From positions 124,001 to 188,000 of IMG/VR virus record IMGVR_UViG_3300043446_005562: a stretch of 64,000 bases of DNA. The stretch is one strand, 5' to 3'. A program made the position numbers and the translations under genes. Positions 15,808 to 55,674 of the stretch are shown here, piece after piece (position 1 is the stretch's first letter; every line of letters begins with the position of its first letter). The notes under the pieces are model-generated. The model ran no database searches, had not been told where the DNA came from, and worked only from the letters and a program-made list of their open reading frames with translations.

Positions 15808-16133
15808 TGAGCGAAAATAAAGAATTTACACCGTTATTCGAACGCGTCCTAATCAAACCAGACAGCGTTGAAACAAAAACAGAGACAGGCATCATTTTAC
15901 CAGTTGAATCACGTAAGCGCCCAAATACCGGCGTCGTTATTTCAATCGGACACCTGGTAGCCGAAAATTCAAAATGTCCAGTAAAAGTAGGGGATAGGGT
16001 TCTCTATCAACGCTATTCCGGACTAGACGTAAAAGTAAATGGTGATTTGCATCACTTAGTTATGGCCAATGATCTTGTTGGCATTATAAATAATACTGCA
16101 AACAGCACAATTGAAATTGCGGACTATGCTTAA
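15807..16133 (+). CDS. groES: Co-chaperonin GroES
   Basis: PLFERVLIKP, KTETGIILP mobile loop, GVVISIG, VKVGDRVLY. Confidence 0.92.
   Translation: MSENKEFTPLFERVLIKPDSVETKTETGIILPVESRKRPNTGVVISIGHLVAENSKCPVKVGDRVLYQRYSGLDVKVNGDLHHLVMANDLVGIINNTANSTIEIADYA
16085..16093 (+). promoter_or_regulatory. Late promoter TATAAATAA inside the groES 3' end
   Basis: Exact T4 late consensus 32 nt upstream of the ATG at 16126. Confidence 0.6.
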
Positions 16134-16704
16134 AAACTTCTCACAATTTATTACTGAAAAACGCGGCGGCACCAAACAGATCTTTTGTGATCTAGACGGT
16201 GTGCTAGTTGATTTCAATCGGGGTTTTAAAAACCTTGAAGCAAACGAGGATAAGTTGACCCCGGAAGAATACAACAAGAAGCACGGAAAACACTCAATAT
16301 GGAAAATAATCGATCCTGAGGGAGAAAAATTCTGGATCAAACTTAAATGGACAAAGGACGGTCGCGAACTATGGGATTACTTAAGTCGCTATAATCCAAT
16401 TATTCTGTCTTCACCAAGCCGTAGTAAGCACTCAATTCCAGGTAAAATGGAATGGGTAAAGCGTAACTTGGGCATAAGTCAAGCAAAGCCAACAACTTCT
16501 GCATCAGATTGGGATCCAGCTAGCCGAATTATCCTAAGTTCAGATAAATTCAAGTTTGCCAGGTCAAAGGACGATATCTTGATTGATGACACTCGTGCTA
16601 AATTAGACAAATGGACTGCTGCTGGCGGAACTGGCGTGTTTCATAATGATGCAACCGATACAATTCGGGTTCTTGAAGAAATATTCACAAGTAAAAAAGA
16701 CTAG
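16126..16704 (+). CDS. HAD-superfamily 5'(3')-nucleotidase-like protein with CTS-like leader
   Basis: FCDLDGVLVDF (motif I), ILSSP, GKMEW, ILIDD (motif IV); N-terminus MLKNFSQFITEK. Confidence 0.8.
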   Translation: MLKNFSQFITEKRGGTKQIFCDLDGVLVDFNRGFKNLEANEDKLTPEEYNKKHGKHSIWKIIDPEGEKFWIKLKWTKDGRELWDYLSRYNPIILSSPSRSKHSIPGKMEWVKRNLGISQAKPTTSASDWDPASRIILSSDKFKFARSKDDILIDDTRAKLDKWTAAGGTGVFHNDATDTIRVLEEIFTSKKD

Positions 16705-35053: not shown

Positions 35054-35413
35054 TTATTTAGGCATCTTTGCCATAGAAGGATCAACCTTCTTGTTAAGGG
35101 CTTTTCCTTTGATAACTAATTTAGAAATCTTTGGATCAACTTCTTTTTTAGAAGCAGTTCCGCGACCCTTTGGCAAATCAGCAATACCGGTTTTTACCAT
35201 TTTCTTAGGCTCAGAACCACGACCCTTTGGCAAATCTGCCATTTCAGGTTTAACAGTTTTGCTGATAGACTTGCCCTTTCCAGCAGGAAGGTCAGAAGTT
35301 TCATCATCAACTTGTTTGGTGATCTTTTTACCTTTAGCAGGAGCACCCTTAGAAAGATCTTGATTCATTTTCTTTTCGAAAAGATACTCTTCGTAGCTTA
35401 AAACTGATTTCAT
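35054..35413 (-). CDS. Lys-rich repeat protein with CTS-like leader; putative DNA-condensing internal protein
   Basis: MKSVLSYEEYLFEKK, then 19-aa repeats around DLP(K/A)G(R/K)G; late box at 35459-35467. Confidence 0.7.
   Translation of the reverse strand: MKSVLSYEEYLFEKKMNQDLSKGAPAKGKKITKQVDDETSDLPAGKGKSISKTVKPEMADLPKGRGSEPKKMVKTGIADLPKGRGTASKKEVDPKISKLVIKGKALNKKVDPSMAKMPK
35164..35300 (-). repeat. 57-bp period coding repeat (DLPKGRG units)
   Basis: GACCCTTTGGCAAATC at 35164 and 35221, with a diverged third copy near 35275. Confidence 0.75.
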
Positions 35414-35481
35414 GTGAACTTTGTTTTTTTAAATATTTTTTTGCTAATCCTAGCTAGGTTATTTATTAGCGAATCTTTACT

Positions 35482-35537: not shown

Positions 35538-37250
35538 TTAATATGCAGTTGAAGGAGCTACAGAACCTGTCAATACTCCTAGTCCTGTTACAGACATTGT
35601 GATGTATTGAGTTTCTGGGTGCCATCCTGCTTCTGTAATAGCATAACGAGATTTCATACCTAATTTTGGAGAGAAAGTACCCTCTGCGATAGTTTGAAGA
35701 CTCTCAGCCATGATATATGGAAGGAATTTAACACCTGGTTCTTCATCAGCACCTTTACGACCGATGTGGATACGGTTATCAGTGAACTTCAAGTTAGGAT
35801 CAACGTATACAGTTAGACCGTGTACTTTACCAGCTGGGTAAAGTTGGCCAGGACCTGAAGGAAGATCGTTATTGAATGGAGCGAAAGAATAACCAGCAAC
35901 ATCAGCAAGAGCTGAAGCTACACGACCGTTAGTAACGATGTATGTACCAGCACCGAAACGACCTCTGTGATAAATCAAGTTAGCCATTTCAAGGATTTTA
36001 GTAACAACACGACGTTGTAGAGTTGAGATGTTTTCGAAACCAGAACCTACAGTAAGATCTAAAGTAGTGATTCCTGAACCTTCAACTGAGTTAACGCTAG
36101 TTGCGTGAGTAGCACCTAAGTTCAATACTCTGTCAACTAATTTTTTGTTGATACCTTGTGCAAGTTCGTTAACCGCAACGTTTTCCAACATAGAGATTAC
36201 GTCGAAATTCCAAACACGGTTAAGATCTTGGATTTGCTCAACAGTTGCAGAGATTGCTACTTGGTCACCTTTTGCTTCGATGAACTTAGTGAACATACGA
36301 AGACCCATTTGACGGAATTTAGAAACTTCAGCAACTTCACGTTTCATACCGTCGAAGTTAACTTGCGAACCGTTTGAACCTAAGAAAGGACCATCGAATG
36401 CAGTTGAAGCATAGTCAGAATCGCTTACTGAAGTGAAACCTGAAATGTGATTTTCTAGAGCAGATACTAAAGTAGCTGTCATACCGTTAGCACCACCGAA
36501 ACCTTTCCAAGGTTCAGCTGAAGTACCAGCAGCAGAGTTACCTGTATCGGTACGTGAACCTGTGTAAGTAACGTTATCAAGAGCAGCAACTGCGTCAGCT
36601 ACAGTAGTAGTAGATGAATCAGTAGTACCACCTTGGATTACTTTTAGGATAGGTAAACCGTCGATACGAGATTTTCCAACGTATTGGAATTTGAAAGCAG
36701 CGCCAGTGTTACCAGTATCACCTTGGATATAGTCACCAATTGTAATACCTGCATTAAGAGCAGAAGACAATTTAACCATATAAGGTTCGTACTGAGTATC
36801 TAAGTTACCACCTTGGTATACGTAGTCCAAGTAAGGTAAGAAACCTACTGGAGAATCCATAGGAACTACACCAACTAGGTCGAAACCGATAGTTTTAGCA
36901 GCTACTTGGATAGCTACTGGAAGAAGGCTTGGGAATTTATCACCAGAACCAGATACAGAAGCACCGTAACCATTTTTTACACCAGCTGTGAATGGTGTCA
37001 TTGAGCTAGTTGGAGCAGAGATTGCACCAATTGAGCTGATAGAACCAGGTTGTTGTAAGAACAAACCAGGAGCTGAACCTGAAGCCAAAGCTTCGTTCAA
37101 TGAGCCTGCGTTATCGAAGATAGCGTGGTTGTGAGCGTAGTCAACTAACCAAGGGCGAGCTTTGATGTCTGCACCGTAACCTTCTAATACTGGAGCCCAA
37201 GTTTCAGTAACTGAAGCGTCATTCAGTCTTTTGAAAATTTTTGTTGCCAT
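35538..37250 (-). CDS. gp23: Major capsid protein (gp23-like)
   Basis: TWAPVLEG, IGFDLVGVVPM, TVEQIQDL, ELAQGINK, GRFGAGTYIV, FLPYI, TFSPKLGMKSRYA; SLNEA probable maturation site; strongly biased codons; TATAAATAA late box at 37389-37397. Confidence 0.93.
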   Translation of the reverse strand: MATKIFKRLNDASVTETWAPVLEGYGADIKARPWLVDYAHNHAIFDNAGSLNEALASGSAPGLFLQQPGSISSIGAISAPTSSMTPFTAGVKNGYGASVSGSGDKFPSLLPVAIQVAAKTIGFDLVGVVPMDSPVGFLPYLDYVYQGGNLDTQYEPYMVKLSSALNAGITIGDYIQGDTGNTGAAFKFQYVGKSRIDGLPILKVIQGGTTDSSTTTVADAVAALDNVTYTGSRTDTGNSAAGTSAEPWKGFGGANGMTATLVSALENHISGFTSVSDSDYASTAFDGPFLGSNGSQVNFDGMKREVAEVSKFRQMGLRMFTKFIEAKGDQVAISATVEQIQDLNRVWNFDVISMLENVAVNELAQGINKKLVDRVLNLGATHATSVNSVEGSGITTLDLTVGSGFENISTLQRRVVTKILEMANLIYHRGRFGAGTYIVTNGRVASALADVAGYSFAPFNNDLPSGPGQLYPAGKVHGLTVYVDPNLKFTDNRIHIGRKGADEEPGVKFLPYIMAESLQTIAEGTFSPKLGMKSRYAITEAGWHPETQYITMSVTGLGVLTGSVAPSTAY

Positions 37251-37267: not shown

Positions 37268-38545
37268 TTAATTTTGTGCTCTTCTTTTGAGAGCGTCTAA
37301 ATAGTTACTTGAGTAACCTCTTAGACTTTCGTGTACTTGTGTTAACGAAACATAGCCCTCTTTACCTTGGCTTTCGTTAATTGTTTGATTATTTATATTG
37401 TTTGCTTGCGCAATTCTTTCGCTGATTGCTCTAAGATCACGTGAATCCCAGAAAGCTTTTGCTTGGTAAGGAGTGTTGATCACTTGAGTAGAGGCCTGTG
37501 CCGCAATCCAGTTACGCTCATTATCTGTCATACCTTCAAACACTGATTTGTATTTTTCTGGCATGAAACGAACGTAGGCTGGGGTGTTTTCTACCTGTTT
37601 GTTCAATACTGCTTCCATGATATTGATAACTTCACCTTCAGTAAAGAAGATAGCGCCTTTCATCGTTTCAACGATTGCAGATTTAGTTTCAGTATCTAAA
37701 GCATAGAATTTTTGTTTATTAGATTCGCTAAGAAGTTTTAGGAATGGATACTTGTTCTCAAGAACAGCATTTGCTGAATTTGATTTAATGTGAGCAAGAA
37801 TTCCGTCAACTGCATTAGTTAATTCATCAACACCAGAGGCATCATTAACTTCGTAGCTTGCATTTTCATTAAGTTTCTTAACGTCAGCTAATAGTCTACG
37901 AGCTTTGATGTTGGTATTTGGAGTGATCTTTTCGTTCATTGTTTCAGCAATGTACTCAGAATAGGCAATACCTTTTTGTAAGTTTTCGCCTAAATACTCA
38001 GAATATTTAATAGCTGCATCAAGATTTTCAGCTAAGTAATTTGCAAATTTGATACCCTTTTCAGCATTTTCTGCAACGTATTCAGCGTATTGAATACCCT
38101 TGTCAACGTTTTGAGCTAGATAGTTTGAATAGGCAATATTCTTTTCAACGTTTTCAGCAATGTATTCGCCGTAATTGATGGATTGATTTACCTTTTCGCC
38201 TAAGTAGTCAGAGTATTGAATATTCTTCTCAATTTTTTCTGCTAAGTAATCGCCGTAATCGATCACGTTGTTTACCTTTTCAGCAACGTGTTCAGTATAA
38301 CCAATACCCTTATTCAACATGGTTGAAAGGTAATTAGAATACTCCACCATTTTTTCCATTTCACCAGCTAGGTAATTTACATACTCAACTAGTTTTCCAG
38401 TTTCTGGTGATTCGTTACTATTTTCGTTAAGAGCACGTAGACCAGCGTTATTTTTCGAAAGGTTTTCTTGAAGAGCGTCGAATTTCTTCTTTACCAATTG
38501 CGAATACTGGTTCATTTCTTCTCTTGATACAAAGTCATTAGCCAT
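37268..38545 (-). CDS. Nested in-frame scaffold/core protein (425 aa, starts MANDFVSREE)
   Basis: Internal late box AATAAATAA at 38583-38591 and an A-rich leader (AAACAACAAAATAACAATAAGCAA) precede the in-frame ATG (codon 236). Confidence 0.6.
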   Translation of the reverse strand: MANDFVSREEMNQYSQLVKKKFDALQENLSKNNAGLRALNENSNESPETGKLVEYVNYLAGEMEKMVEYSNYLSTMLNKGIGYTEHVAEKVNNVIDYGDYLAEKIEKNIQYSDYLGEKVNQSINYGEYIAENVEKNIAYSNYLAQNVDKGIQYAEYVAENAEKGIKFANYLAENLDAAIKYSEYLGENLQKGIAYSEYIAETMNEKITPNTNIKARRLLADVKKLNENASYEVNDASGVDELTNAVDGILAHIKSNSANAVLENKYPFLKLLSESNKQKFYALDTETKSAIVETMKGAIFFTEGEVINIMEAVLNKQVENTPAYVRFMPEKYKSVFEGMTDNERNWIAAQASTQVINTPYQAKAFWDSRDLRAISERIAQANNINNQTINESQGKEGYVSLTQVHESLRGYSSNYLDALKRRAQN

Positions 38546-39250
38546 TTGCTTATTGTTATTTTGTTGTTTAGGAATTTCAGAATTATTTATTCTATAGATC
38601 TTCACAGAATCTTCAAAAGAGAAGCTTTCTGATATATCTGTTAATTTATTTGTGATTGAAGCAGTCTTTAAAGTATCCAAAGACTCAAACAGAACTGAGA
38701 AATTGTCCTTAAGGCTTTCAGATACCTGAGTTAGGGATGCTTGCGAGAAACCAGGTTCAGCAACAATATCGTAGGTAAAGATTTTTTGAATCTTAACAAC
38801 ACCGCTCTCATTTACATTACCTGCAGCTCTTGATGAGGTTGAGATAGTACAGCCTGACTCAACTAGGGTCTTTGCAATACGACCGCATGGAGTATCAAGT
38901 ACTCTTAATTTGATACGAACAGTATTTGAAGGCTCGTCATAGTTAAGAGATTCAACCACGTGAGATACGTTCTTTAAGGAAACGTCAAAGCTTTGTGGAT
39001 GATCAAGCTCTCCAAATAACTGACCCTTTTTGATTTTTTCGTTTAGATAGGAAAGATGAGGCAAGTACTCTTGCTTCTCATAGATACGATTGTTTTCGTT
39101 CTTTTGTCCAAAGACTGCGCAAATACCTTCAAGGATAATTGAACCGTCATTTGATTTTGAAACATTTAATGCTTCATTAACTCGTTCAATGATGAATAAT
39201 TGACTTTCATCAAAGCCGGTCTTTAGTAAGTTTGTTTTAGCGCTAGTCAA
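37268..39250 (-). CDS. gp21: Prohead protease (gp21-like) fused to core/scaffold domain
   Basis: LEGICA, NENNRIY, GELDHP, NVSH, LDTPCG, STSSRAAG, TYDIVAEPGF; long helical repeat C-terminus; TTG start; late boxes at 39269-39277 and 39316-39324. Confidence 0.88.
   Translation of the reverse strand: MTSAKTNLLKTGFDESQLFIIERVNEALNVSKSNDGSIILEGICAVFGQKNENNRIYEKQEYLPHLSYLNEKIKKGQLFGELDHPQSFDVSLKNVSHVVESLNYDEPSNTVRIKLRVLDTPCGRIAKTLVESGCTISTSSRAAGNVNESGVVKIQKIFTYDIVAEPGFSQASLTQVSESLKDNFSVLFESLDTLKTASITNKLTDISESFSFEDSVKIYRINNSEIPKQQNNNKQMANDFVSREEMNQYSQLVKKKFDALQENLSKNNAGLRALNENSNESPETGKLVEYVNYLAGEMEKMVEYSNYLSTMLNKGIGYTEHVAEKVNNVIDYGDYLAEKIEKNIQYSDYLGEKVNQSINYGEYIAENVEKNIAYSNYLAQNVDKGIQYAEYVAENAEKGIKFANYLAENLDAAIKYSEYLGENLQKGIAYSEYIAETMNEKITPNTNIKARRLLADVKKLNENASYEVNDASGVDELTNAVDGILAHIKSNSANAVLENKYPFLKLLSESNKQKFYALDTETKSAIVETMKGAIFFTEGEVINIMEAVLNKQVENTPAYVRFMPEKYKSVFEGMTDNERNWIAAQASTQVINTPYQAKAFWDSRDLRAISERIAQANNINNQTINESQGKEGYVSLTQVHESLRGYSSNYLDALKRRAQN
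37934..38395 (-). repeat. Eleven tandem 14-aa repeats in the scaffold domain (K.I.Y..Y[LIV]AE...)
   Basis: KLVEYVNYLAGEME / KMVEYSNYLSTMLN / ... / KGIAYSEYIAETMN; 42-bp periodicity. Confidence 0.85.
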
Positions 39251-39315
39251 CTTTGTAAGACTTTTTTATTATTTATATAGCGATCTATCTGCTAAAATAG
39301 ATGGCTATACTAACA

Positions 39316-40194
39316 TTATTTATCAAAGTCTTTTAGCAATTCTCTAAGAGTTGAGAGGTTTTGTTCTGATTGATTGGTGAGATCAGGTTTATTTACCTTG
39401 ACTTCAAAAATAAAAGCTCCACGATGGCCAAGCGGTGAGACTAGACCCTGGTCGGGAATGCGCACTCTAATATCTGATAGATTAGTAACATTAAGCGATT
39501 TTATGCGATATTTTTTACCCAGAGGATTCTCCAGGATGATTTCTTCAGCAAAAAGAACATCATGTAGGCTTAAATTAACAGTCTGTATAAGATCAATTTC
39601 CCTGATTTCAAGACCGACTTTGTCAATTATTACCCTAATTATTAGGTCTCCAACCGCACTTGCCTGTCGAGCCCGGCCAAAAAAGTCAGATCTTTCAAAT
39701 ATTTGACTTGAGCCAGCTCCCCTAATCCTGAGCGTAATTACTTCGTTTGAGCCAACTTGGGTAATCGGATAGGCTGTCTTACTTAGGTCAAGCCGAATAC
39801 GATAAGTTTTATTCTCAAAGCTCGACCGGTCCAATCCAATCTTGGATATTTGATAGTCCACAACAAATTCAACGCCAGCCATTAGTTCAGTAAGAGAGAA
39901 CTTTCTATCCCTAATCACATGCAAATGGGTAGGAGTCTCAAAACTACCAAATGAAAAGTCATGAAAAGAGGTAAAATGGTCCTGAAACTGAGGGCCCATT
40001 TGTGCACGATCGTATTCAGCGCGCTTGGCCGGATCACTAAGCGTGTTATAGGCATCCGCTATCTGTTTGAAGAGTTCCTCGCCATCCGGATTTTTATCAG
40101 GGTGGTATATCTTAGTTAATTTTCGATATGCCTTTTTTATCTCGTCAGGAGTTGCCTCTTGCGAAATCTCAAGAATTTCATAATAATTTTTCAA
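39316..40194 (-). CDS. dnaJ: DnaJ-family co-chaperone
   Basis: [23 protein letters not shown]-domain; C-terminal GDLIIRV and GAFIFEV; no zinc finger. Confidence 0.9.
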
Positions 40195-52137: not shown

Positions 52138-52203
52138 TAATTATCCGGTTATTTCTTATTATTTATCAACGCGGATGAGAGTTACGAAAATAGGAATCTG
52201 AGC

Positions 52204-54435: not shown

Positions 54436-54522
54436 GATTGGCTTAGTATATTTGAATTATTTATCTTGCCAGCTGACAAGTTTATAGGTATATTATAATT
54501 AAGCAACTAAAAGCTATACGAT

Positions 54523-55637: not shown

Positions 55638-55674
55638 AGAGTCTGTTTCTTTTTGTAATATTATTTATCTCTGC

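What the first reader, a model, noticed from the sequence alone, without database searches (positions are those of the whole stretch)
37268..39250. Nested gene: scaffold expressed from an internal late promoter within the protease-scaffold fusion
Seen in sequence: the 660-aa ORF starts with a weak TTG. At 38583-38591 it contains a consensus late box, followed by an A-rich leader that translates as low-complexity KQQNNNKQ, and then an in-frame ATG (38545). Established: T4 encodes gp21 and gp22 separately, whereas lambda C/Nu3 and herpesvirus UL26/UL26.5 use nested protease/scaffold genes. Inference: a T4-like phage has converged on the nested design, giving abundant 425-aa scaffold and a little scaffold-tethered protease.
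Basis: partly seen in the sequence, partly recalled or inferred. Interest (0 to 1): 0.65.

Follow-up and report, generated by a model that had tools for sequence, protein, structure and literature searches.

The report
Scaffold gene nested inside phage protease gene
A 253-kb uncultured jumbo phage fuses its T4-type head protease to its scaffold protein, and comparison with relatives indicates that an internal promoter and ATG also make the scaffold on its own, as herpesviruses and phage lambda do.

Summary
ORF 39250..37268 (-) encodes 660 aa from a TTG. Its N-terminus is a T4 gp21-type prohead protease. A perfect copy of the phage's own gene-start motif, ATAAATAAT, lies at 38582-38590, and the first in-frame ATG (38545, Met236) follows 36 nt later.

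The motif is real. Its 8-mer core occurs 68 times in the 252.6-kb genome. Fifty-two copies are intergenic, all point toward a gene, and none lies antisense inside a coding sequence (11 expected). The genome also encodes a gp55-like late sigma factor.

All 85 related loci carry the fusion. Among 37 non-redundant relatives (46-94% identity), Met236 is invariant. Ile221 is always ATA, which is 14% of Ile codons in this family, and Asn222 is always AAT. Synonymous diversity drops at only two places in the gene: box-to-ATG, and a stretch upstream of the capsid gene. The full-length ORF starts with TTG or GTG in almost all of these relatives.

T4 has late promoters at the matching positions, before gene 22 and inside the end of gene 22. 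The architecture is therefore T4's with genes 21 and 22 fused in frame.

No transcript or protein data could be obtained. Whether the design is convergent or inherited is unresolved. I rate it a new variant of a known kind, well supported by comparative evidence.

The parts
37268..39250 (-). Full-length protease-scaffold ORF, 660 aa, TTG start at 39250, stop at 37270-37268
   Evidence: Fused in 85/85 related loci. TTG or GTG start in almost all of 37 non-redundant relatives.
39268..39276 (-). P1: ATAAATAAT box (with the preceding T it is an exact TATAAATA), 17 nt upstream of the TTG start
   Evidence: Conserved at the same spacing in relatives.
38651..39193 (-). Prohead protease domain, about aa 20-200. 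His84 (39001-38999) and Ser139 (38836-38834) align with T4 gp21 His85 and Ser140.
   Evidence: Pfam PF03420 at 35.2 bits (cut-off 27), phrog_207 E=4e-38. hhalign to T4 gp21, probability 90.5%. H84, S139 and S140 are invariant.
38627..38635 (-). Ile-Ser-Glu 206-208, candidate self-cleavage site (T4-type L/I-x-E then cut) that would free the protease from the scaffold
   Evidence: Conserved in 34/37 relatives. An equivalent (I/L/V)-x-E-(S/A) follows the protease domain in PTm1, Lak-A1 and the megaphages. Cleavage itself is inferred.
38516..38620 (-). First of only two troughs of synonymous diversity in the gene (aa 211-245). It spans box, leader, ATG and the first codons of the nested ORF, in a linker modelled as unstructured.
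   Evidence: Observed/expected falls to 0.22 against a gene mean of 0.82. AF2 models residues 210-242 as coil with pLDDT about 30.
38582..38590 (-). P2: internal ATAAATAAT box, encoded by Ile221-Asn222-Asn223
   Evidence: ATA in 37/37, AAT in 37/37. The other eight conserved Ile columns use mixed codons.
38546..38581 (-). A-rich 36-nt stretch between box and ATG. It has no Shine-Dalgarno sequence and no other start codon. The CAAAATAA element (Gln230-Asn231-Asn232) is conserved.
37268..38545 (-). Nested in-frame ORF from ATG 38545: 425-aa scaffold (Met236-Asn660)
   Evidence: Met236 invariant. It sits immediately before the first long helix, 243-276.
37931..38392 (-). Eleven in-register 14-residue repeats (aa 287-440) forming long helices, many carrying an L/I-x-E motif
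   Evidence: L/I-x-E in the scaffold part: 15 found, 6.1 expected, P=0.0005.
37388..37831 (-). C-terminal helical domain of the scaffold (aa 474-621), the best-modelled part
   Evidence: pLDDT 70-83 over aa 560-610. Similar C-terminal motifs occur in Lak-A1 and the megaphages.
37388..37396 (-). P3: third ATAAATAAT box, inside the scaffold 3' end, 137 nt upstream of the capsid gene ATG
   Evidence: Present in roughly half of the relatives. T4 has TATAAATA inside gene 22, 135 nt before gene 23.
35538..37250 (-). gp23-type major capsid protein gene. Only 17 nt separate it from the scaffold stop, with no box between, so it depends on P1, P2 and P3.
   Evidence: Pfam PF07068 E=1.5e-40

Best explanation
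One reading frame gives two proteins.

The long form is made from promoter P1 and a weak TTG start. It is a 660-aa T4 gp21-type serine protease tethered through a disordered linker to a coiled-coil scaffold, and it is made in small amounts.

The short form comes from a second promoter, P2. P2 is written into the Ile-Asn-Asn codons of the linker. It starts an mRNA whose first AUG is Met236, which yields the 425-aa scaffold alone in large amounts. That mRNA also carries the capsid gene.

The shared scaffold part would co-assemble both forms into the procapsid core. This places a few protease molecules inside the shell. The protease then frees itself, probably at Ile-Ser-Glu208, and cuts the scaffold at its many L/I-x-E sites.

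The layout matches T4 (gene 21, late promoter, gene 22, late promoter inside the end of gene 22, gene 23) with the 21|22 boundary read through in frame.

Shown here: the anatomy, the genome-wide behaviour of the motif, and the conservation of box, Met and start codons. Inferred: transcription from P2, initiation at Met236, late timing, stoichiometry and the cleavage sites.
For: Protease and context:
- The protease is identified with its catalytic His and Ser.
- A gp23-type capsid gene follows directly.

The motif as a gene-start signal:
- ATAAATAA occurs 68 times in the genome; 52 copies are intergenic in a genome that is 95% coding.
- Every copy is sense to the next gene.
- Distances to the start codon cluster at 4-8 nt and 15-26 nt.
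- No information lies upstream of the box, so there is no -35 element.
- Antisense copies inside coding sequences: 0 found, 11.0 +/- 2.8 expected. This points to an orientation-dependent DNA signal.
- A gp55-like late sigma factor is encoded (phrog_234, E=1.6e-18).
- Genes behind the motif include a baseplate wedge protein and an endolysin-like protein.

The internal box P2:
- It is a 9/9 match, and the only copy deep inside a gene that is followed by an in-frame ATG.
- The fusion is present in 85/85 loci.
- Met236 is 37/37; Ile221 is ATA in 37/37 although ATA is 14% of Ile codons; Asn222 is AAT in 37/37.
- Only two synonymous-diversity troughs exist in 660 codons, and one covers box to ATG to codon 245.

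Start codons:
- The long form starts with TTG or GTG in almost all of 37 relatives.
- Starts associated with the motif genome-wide are ATG 52, TTG 3, GTG 1.

Structure and cleavage motifs:
- Met236 lies in an unstructured linker just before the first scaffold helix.
- L/I-x-E motifs are enriched in the scaffold part.

Parallels:
- T4 has TATAAATA at the 21/22 junction and inside the gene 22 3' end.
- Serratia phage BF has TATAAATA between its separate protease and scaffold genes.
Against: - There is no transcript, 5'-end, ribosome or peptide evidence.
- P2 lies 36-37 nt from its ATG, at the long end of the usual spacing. In the most distant subclade it lies 60-66 nt away.
- One database homolog (P0014) has Leu in place of Met236, and its DNA could not be read.
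- The scaffold role of the C-terminal part rests on position, helical repeats, cleavage motifs and a weak match to the BF scaffolding protein (E=2e-4). No family hit supports it.
- Tenacibaculum phage PTm1 has the fusion without a junction Met, so a fusion can exist without a nested start.
- The AF2 model is of low confidence (mean pLDDT 53).
Confidence: 0.75

Rival explanations
1. Lambda-type nesting without an internal promoter. Met236 is used as an internal translation start on the P1 mRNA. The conserved box has another role, for example an RNA-level translation enhancer.
For: Met236 and the first codons after it are conserved. The A-rich leader without a Shine-Dalgarno sequence resembles other gene starts in this genome. 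In lambda and the archaeal virus HFTV1 the nested scaffold is made by internal translation initiation (bioRxiv 10.64898/2026.09.13.751334).
Against: The box is identical to the motif found in front of about 50 genes. That motif is completely avoided on the antisense strand of coding sequences, which an RNA-level signal would not require. Several copies sit 4-5 nt before an ATG, which fits a promoter for leaderless mRNA. The motif resembles the gp55-dependent TATAAATA, and a gp55 homolog is present. The two mechanisms can act together.
Confidence: 0.12
2. A single fusion polyprotein only, as with P2 gpO. The scaffold domain is always made attached to the protease and released by cleavage. Met236 and Ile-Asn-Asn are conserved for protein reasons.
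For: Fused protease-scaffold proteins without an obvious junction Met exist, for example PTm1 ORF-300. A conserved L/I-x-E site follows the protease domain.
Against: Protein constraint cannot explain the invariant use of a rare Ile codon, or the loss of synonymous variation across a linker that is modelled as disordered and varies in amino-acid sequence. A 1:1 protease:scaffold ratio is unlike T4, which has 100 gp21 to 576 gp22 (PMC5694885). It does not explain the conserved weak start of the long form.
Confidence: 0.06
3. P2 is a real promoter but exists to raise capsid-gene transcription. Initiation at Met236 is incidental or unused.
For: The capsid gene has no box in its 17-nt upstream spacer, and P3 is missing from about half of the relatives. 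In those phages the capsid gene must be transcribed from P2 or P1.
Against: Met236 is the first AUG of a P2 transcript and is invariant. Synonymous constraint continues into codons 237-245. A promoter needed only for the capsid gene would not have to sit exactly at the protease/scaffold domain boundary.
Confidence: 0.05

Closest known systems
Herpes simplex virus 1 UL26 / UL26.5 (assemblin protease-scaffold and nested scaffold)
   Same: The protease is N-terminal and the scaffold C-terminal in one ORF. The abundant scaffold is made in frame from its own promoter inside the long gene, and the shared C-terminus brings both forms into the procapsid (established knowledge; summarised in bioRxiv 10.64898/2026.09.13.751334). 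T4 gp21-type proteases are homologs of the herpesvirus protease (Cheng et al. 2004 and Liu & Mushegian 2004, as cited in PMC5694885).
   Different: This is a bacterial virus. The promoter is a T4-late-like -10-only box for a gp55-type sigma factor. Nothing here has been shown experimentally. The scaffold is built of 14-residue repeats with no detectable similarity to herpesvirus scaffolds.
Phage lambda C / Nu3, Mu I / Z, archaeal virus HFTV1 gp17 / gp17.5
   Same: The scaffold is nested in frame within the C-terminal part of the protease gene. The short form is in excess over the long form (PMC4378225 listed).
   Different: In those systems the short form arises from internal translation initiation on the same mRNA. 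Here an internal promoter is indicated as well. Lambda C is a ClpP/SppA-type protease rather than the assemblin/S77 type (from my own knowledge).
Phage T4 genes 21, 22 and 23 with their late promoters
   Same: The protease family is the same, the capsid protein is gp23-type, and a gp55-type sigma factor is present. The order is also the same: protease, promoter, scaffold, promoter inside the scaffold 3' end about 135 nt before the capsid gene. T4 itself makes in-frame shorter products from internal starts in genes 17 and 21 (annotation; PMC9026906).
   Different: In T4, genes 21 and 22 are separate ORFs, so the protease is not tethered to the scaffold. Here they are one ORF, and the 'gene 22' promoter and start codon lie in coding sequence. 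The long form also has a conserved TTG or GTG start.
P2 gpO and Tenacibaculum phage PTm1 ORF-300 (protease-scaffold fusions)
   Same: A single polypeptide carries an N-terminal protease and a C-terminal scaffold. PTm1 ORF-300 is a homolog, is followed by the capsid gene, and comes from a cultured Bacteroidota jumbo phage.
   Different: No conserved junction Met or internal box is evident in PTm1. gpO is described as made only as the full-length protein.

Membership tests
Peptidase S77 (T4 gp21 prohead protease; assemblin-like fold) | Sequence match to the family model above the curated threshold | tested here: met
   PF03420 at 35.2 bits against a cut-off of 27. phrog_207 'head maturation protease' E=4e-38. 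hhalign to T4 gp21, probability 90.5%.
Peptidase S77 (T4 gp21 prohead protease; assemblin-like fold) | Catalytic His and Ser present at the positions of T4 His85 and Ser140 (residue roles recalled from the literature) | tested here: met
   His84 and Ser139 align with T4 His85 and Ser140. Both are invariant in 38 sequences.
Peptidase S77 (T4 gp21 prohead protease; assemblin-like fold) | Cleaves head proteins after Glu in L/I-x-E | not testable with these tools
   Only indirect evidence. L/I-x-E is enriched in the scaffold part (15 found, 6.1 expected, P=0.0005), with conserved sites at 206-208 and 624-626.
Nested protease/scaffold genes (lambda C/Nu3, HSV UL26/UL26.5, HFTV1 gp17/17.5) | Protease domain and scaffold domain in one ORF, protease N-terminal | tested here: met
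   Fused in 85/85 related loci.
Nested protease/scaffold genes (lambda C/Nu3, HSV UL26/UL26.5, HFTV1 gp17/17.5) | In-frame internal start codon at the domain boundary, maintained by selection | tested here: met
   Met236 in 37/37 non-redundant relatives and 117/118 homologs, plus the megaphages. Synonymous constraint surrounds it.
Nested protease/scaffold genes (lambda C/Nu3, HSV UL26/UL26.5, HFTV1 gp17/17.5) | Two protein products actually made, with the short one in excess | not testable with these tools
No cultured member of the clade is known.
T4-type late promoter (gp55-dependent, -10-only TATAAATA) | Motif TATAAATA, no -35 element, close upstream of late genes | tested here: inconclusive
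   P1 has an exact TATAAATA. P2 matches 7 of 8, but 9 of 9 to the phage's own ATAAATAAT. Position -1 in the phage's sites is mostly A. No information lies upstream of the box. Genes behind the motif include baseplate, endolysin-like and head genes, but also a deoxyribonucleotidase.
T4-type late promoter (gp55-dependent, -10-only TATAAATA) | Phage encodes a gp55-type sigma factor | tested here: met
   A 147-aa ORF at genome 122546-122989 (-): T4 gp55 search E=1.3e-5, phrog_234 'late sigma transcription factor' E=1.6e-18.
T4-type late promoter (gp55-dependent, -10-only TATAAATA) | Transcription start a few bases downstream, active late in infection | not testable with these tools
   No RNA data.
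T4 gp22-type scaffolding (prohead core) protein | Detectable homology to gp22 or annotated scaffolds | tested here: inconclusive
   No Pfam, PHROG or PDB family hit for aa 236-660. Weak BLASTP match to the Serratia phage BF scaffolding protein (E=2e-4, 29% over 96 aa). None to PAU gp152.

The most novel reading that the evidence does not exclude
The nested protease-scaffold gene with an internal promoter may not be a convergence. It could be the ancestral arrangement of the assemblin-type (T4 gp21 / herpesvirus) head-maturation module, retained in this jumbo-phage, megaphage and Lak lineage and in herpesviruses, and split into separate genes 21 and 22 in T4-like phages. Promoter and start codon stay in place in both states.
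Probability: 0.1. Interest if true: 0.85.

Novelty: new variant of a known kind. Interest (0 to 1): 0.62.

Why it matters
Nested protease/scaffold genes are textbook for lambda and herpesviruses but have been described for only a few viruses. I found none described for the T4-type protease lineage in the literature I searched.

Here the design appears throughout a large, abundant and wholly uncultured clade of 250-kb freshwater-type phages. More than 4,000 long homologs were scored. With a conserved junction Met, it also appears in the largest known phages (462-735 kb).

It gives a simple genetic account of how these phages set the protease:scaffold:capsid ratio. Promoters are stacked (P1, P2, P3) and a weak TTG or GTG start is paired with a strong ATG start.

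It is also a clean example of a promoter held inside coding sequence by codon choice. The protease fold is homologous to herpesvirus assemblin, so the shared gene architecture bears on the common origin of tailed-phage and herpesvirus capsid assembly.

For annotation, one ORF here should carry two CDS features. The motif ATAAATAA can also be used to place gene starts in this clade.

Tried and rejected
- Exact T4 consensus. TATAAATA is not enriched in the window (4 found, 3.99 expected). Taken alone this would have made the box look like chance. The phage's own 8- and 9-mer overturned that.
- PDB sequence searches. The protease part gave no hit and the scaffold part only noise.
- DNA tandem repeats. 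Tandem Repeats Finder sees none under the 14-aa protein repeats.
- Repeat number as a capsid-size ruler. Rejected: 11-12 repeats occur in phages from 253 kb to 735 kb.
- An RNA hairpin for the invariant block at aa 625-629. A 9-bp stem exists in the window sequence. The alignment of 37 relatives supports only 3 pairs, so this is not supported.
- The one homolog with Leu at position 236 (P0014). Its contigs gave no DNA.
- Foldseek against viral models. It returned relatives, including the PTm1 and pT24 fusions, but TM-scores are low because the model is mostly long, poorly placed helices. I used it only as a pointer.
- An overlapping ORF as the cause of the synonymous troughs. None of 40 aa or more overlaps either trough.
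- Another genetic code. Not needed: all genes read open under table 11.
Full report
**1. What is there**

On the minus strand, 39250..37268 is a 660-codon ORF that begins with TTG. Two in-frame TAA codons lie five codons upstream. No other ATG, GTG or TTG occurs before the conserved protease core, so the TTG start is essentially forced.

Residues about 20-200 are a T4 gp21-type prohead protease:
- Pfam PF03420 scores 35.2 bits against a cut-off of 27.
- phrog_207 matches at E=4e-38.
- A profile alignment to T4 gp21 has 90.5% probability. It puts His84 and Ser139 on T4 His85 and Ser140.
- Both residues are invariant in 38 homologs.

The next gene, 17 nt downstream, is a gp23-type major capsid protein (PF07068, E=1.5e-40). 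The gene upstream is a DnaJ homolog.

That is 7 of 8 against T4's TATAAATA. It is followed by an A-rich stretch coding KQQNNNKQ, then by ATG 38545 (Met236). Met236 is in frame and is the first ATG of the ORF. It opens a 425-aa product. The coordinates and the description are correct.

**2. Is the box more than chance?**

Exact TATAAATA is not enriched in the window (4 found, 3.99 expected). The string actually shared by P1 (in front of the TTG), the internal site and a third site is ATAAATAAT. It occurs 9 times in the window against 2.0 expected, and 0 of 100 shuffles reach 9.

The window lies in a single 252,618-bp phage contig. In that genome the 8-mer ATAAATAA behaves as follows:
- It occurs 68 times. 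Fifty-two copies are intergenic although about 95% of the genome is coding, and 52 lie within 60 nt upstream of an ORF start.
- Every copy points toward the next gene.
- Distances to the start codon cluster at 4-8 nt and 15-26 nt. There is no information upstream of the box, so no -35 element, and an A-rich tract follows it.
- Inside coding sequences there are 16 sense copies and no antisense copy. Synonymous-codon shuffles expect 11.0 +/- 2.8 antisense copies, with a minimum of 5 in 100 shuffles.

Avoidance on the non-coding strand is what one expects of a directional DNA signal such as a promoter. It is not expected of a signal read in mRNA. The 4-5-nt class fits a promoter that starts transcription at the A of the ATG.

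The genome encodes a 147-aa homolog of the T4 late sigma factor gp55 (E=1.3e-5 to T4 gp55; phrog_234 E=1.6e-18). Genes behind the motif include a baseplate wedge protein, an endolysin-like protein and this head gene. They also include a deoxyribonucleotidase. So 'late' is likely but not shown.

Nearly all of the 16 sense copies within ORF calls sit in the first 30 or so codons of an over-extended ORF call, or in the last 40 or so codons of an upstream gene. The internal box, at codon 221 of 660, is the only copy deep in a gene that is followed by an in-frame ATG. Synonymous shuffles of this gene give 0.076 copies against 2 observed (P=0.001).

**3. Relatives**

The closest records in the phage collection are uncultured megaphages of 462-735 kb (LR756500-504, LR745206). 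Next come the Lak phages.

The protein database holds more than 4,000 long homologs. The best 120 (58-96% identity, 593-677 aa apart from a few fragments) are all fusions. IMG/VR gave 80 loci at 46-94% identity. In all 85 loci examined, protease and scaffold are one open frame.

Met236 is present in 117 of 118 database homologs. P0014 has Leu, and its DNA was not retrievable. Met236 is present in 37 of 37 loci after removing pairs above 95% identity. A Met also sits at the same junction in all five megaphage loci.

At the DNA level the box is invariant:
- Ile221 is ATA in 37/37, although ATA is only 14% of Ile codons in this family. The eight other conserved Ile columns use mixed codons.
- Asn222 is AAT in 37/37.
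- Position 223 is AAT, or AAA when the residue changes to Lys, so ATAAATAA is preserved.

A scan of synonymous diversity (observed/expected, 9-codon windows) averages 0.82 and is near 1 over most of the gene, so synonymous sites are saturated. It falls in only two places:
- aa 211-245, minimum 0.22: box, leader, ATG and the first codons of the nested ORF.
- aa 600-632, minimum 0.09: upstream of the capsid gene.

No alternative-frame ORF overlaps either place.

The long form starts with TTG or GTG in almost all of the 37 relatives, with P1 at a fixed 17-18 nt upstream. Starts behind the motif genome-wide are ATG 52, TTG 3, GTG 1. A weak start for the long form and ATG for the short form are therefore both maintained.

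**4. Protein anatomy**

The AF2 model built from 38 sequences is poor overall (mean pLDDT 53), but its layout is clear:

| Residues | Modelled as |
|---|---|
| 26-165 | beta-rich protease domain |
| to 209 | helices |
| 210-242 | coil, pLDDT about 30; holds the box codons and Met236 |
| 243-440 | very long helices |
| 474-621 | helical domain, pLDDT up to 83 |

The long helices are eleven in-register 14-residue repeats (aa 287-440).

L/I-x-E is the T4 gp21 cleavage motif (PMC9026906). It occurs 15 times in the scaffold part against 6.1 expected (P=0.0005). The best-conserved sites include Ile-Ser-Glu 206-208, just after the protease domain, and Ile-Asn-Glu 624-626. An equivalent site follows the protease domain in PTm1, Lak-A1 and the megaphages.

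The scaffold assignment of aa 236-660 rests on these features, on its position between protease and capsid genes, and on a weak match to the annotated scaffolding protein of Serratia phage BF (E=2e-4). No family model hits it.

**5. Comparison with T4 and others**

In T4, genes 21, 22 and 23 are separate. TATAAATA lies at the 21/22 junction, 28 nt before the gene 22 ATG. It also lies inside the gene 22 3' end, 135 nt before the gene 23 ATG.

The window has boxes at the corresponding places. P2 lies before the scaffold start. P3 lies inside the scaffold 3' end, 137 nt before the capsid ATG.

In Serratia phage BF the protease and scaffold genes are separate. They are in the same frame, 69 nt apart, with a TATAAATA between them. 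The window therefore looks like the T4 layout with the 21|22 boundary read through, and with the scaffold's promoter and start codon kept.

T4 itself makes shorter in-frame products from internal starts in genes 17 and 21 (PMC9026906).

Nested protease/scaffold genes are known from lambda, HSV-1 and, by Ribo-seq and proteomics, the archaeal virus HFTV1 (bioRxiv 10.64898/2026.09.13.751334). [quoted passage not shown] My searches found no description of it for T4-type proteases or jumbo phages.

Fusions as such are wider. Lak-A1 has a 584-aa fusion. The cultured Tenacibaculum phage PTm1 has a 564-aa fusion followed by its capsid gene, but without a junction Met. So fusion does not by itself bring a nested start. 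The conserved Met and box are an added feature of this clade.

**6. Mechanism proposed**

P1 plus TTG gives a little protease-scaffold. P2 plus ATG gives much scaffold, and the P2 transcript continues into the capsid gene. P3, where present, adds further capsid mRNA.

The graded output would match the needs known from T4: about 100 gp21, 576 gp22 and 960 gp23 per head (PMC5694885).

The shared scaffold part would carry the protease into the core. Self-cleavage at residue 208 and cuts at the repeat motifs would then clear the core.

The anatomy and the conservation are shown. Transcription from P2, initiation at Met236, the timing, the ratios and the cleavages are inferred.

**7. Limits**

There are no expression data. 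No member of the clade is cultured. The host is unknown; the absence of Shine-Dalgarno sequences and the kinship to Lak and Tenacibaculum phages hint at Bacteroidota.

The direction of evolution (fusion or split) is unresolved. I did not build a rooted tree.

**8. Verdict**

It is a new variant of a known kind. Interest is 0.62.

Noticed in passing
window 37364-37378 (-), aa 625-629 of the ORF; wider trough 37355-37453: A 15-nt block (Asn-Glu-Ser-Gln-Gly codons) about 128 nt upstream of the capsid ATG is nearly invariant at the DNA level in all 37 relatives (AAC 37/37, AGC 28/29, CAA 35/35). This holds even where the P3 box is absent. It is the deepest synonymous trough in the gene (0.09). It contains a conserved Ile-Asn-Glu cleavage-type motif, but that does not explain the codon invariance. 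A hairpin seen in the window sequence is not conserved.
   Followed up: partly
whole genome (G000, 252,618 bp); window copies e.g. 52159-52166, 54457-54464, 55661-55668 (-): ATAAATAA is the dominant gene-start motif of this phage. There are 68 copies, 52 of them intergenic, and none antisense in coding sequence. About ten copies lie only 4-8 nt before an ATG, which suggests leaderless mRNAs.
   Followed up: yes
genome 122546-122989 (-), about 1 kb before the window start (L099:1441-1884): A 147-aa homolog of the T4 late sigma factor gp55 (phrog_234, E=1.6e-18), next to a RuvC-like resolvase gene.
   Followed up: partly
window 39315-39323 (-) and 39278-39314: A further ATAAATAAT overlaps the stop codon of the DnaJ gene, 65 nt before the TTG. 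An inverted repeat follows it, and then P1. The box is conserved in many relatives at this position. Its role (a second promoter, or simply the conserved end of DnaJ) is unclear.
   Followed up: no
window 39316-40194 (-): A phage-encoded DnaJ (J domain plus DnaJ C-terminal domain) sits directly upstream of the head-assembly genes. The neighbourhood is conserved in relatives (DnaJ_C was seen next to the homolog).
   Followed up: no
window 35054-35413 (-): A 119-aa lysine-rich protein just downstream of the capsid gene carries three copies of a motif like Asp-Leu-Pro-Lys-Gly-Arg-Gly. An ATAAATAA box lies 45 nt upstream of it (35459-35466). It may be an internal head or decoration protein.
   Followed up: no
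window 37931-38392 (-): The scaffold holds eleven exactly in-register 14-residue repeats. The megaphage homologs have 11-12 such repeats despite genomes up to three times larger, so repeat number does not track genome size.
   Followed up: yes
L102:2507-4201 (Tenacibaculum phage PTm1 ORF-300); L101:3447-5201 (Lak-A1): Cultured and Lak relatives also have protease fused to a long C-terminal part. PTm1 lacks a Met at the junction. Lak-A1 replaces the 14-aa repeats with an acidic low-complexity stretch.
   Followed up: partly
window 16111-16704 (+): A 5'-3' deoxyribonucleotidase homolog is the only other motif-associated gene in the window with a TTG start. Its box (16086-16094) lies inside the end of the preceding gene.
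   Followed up: no
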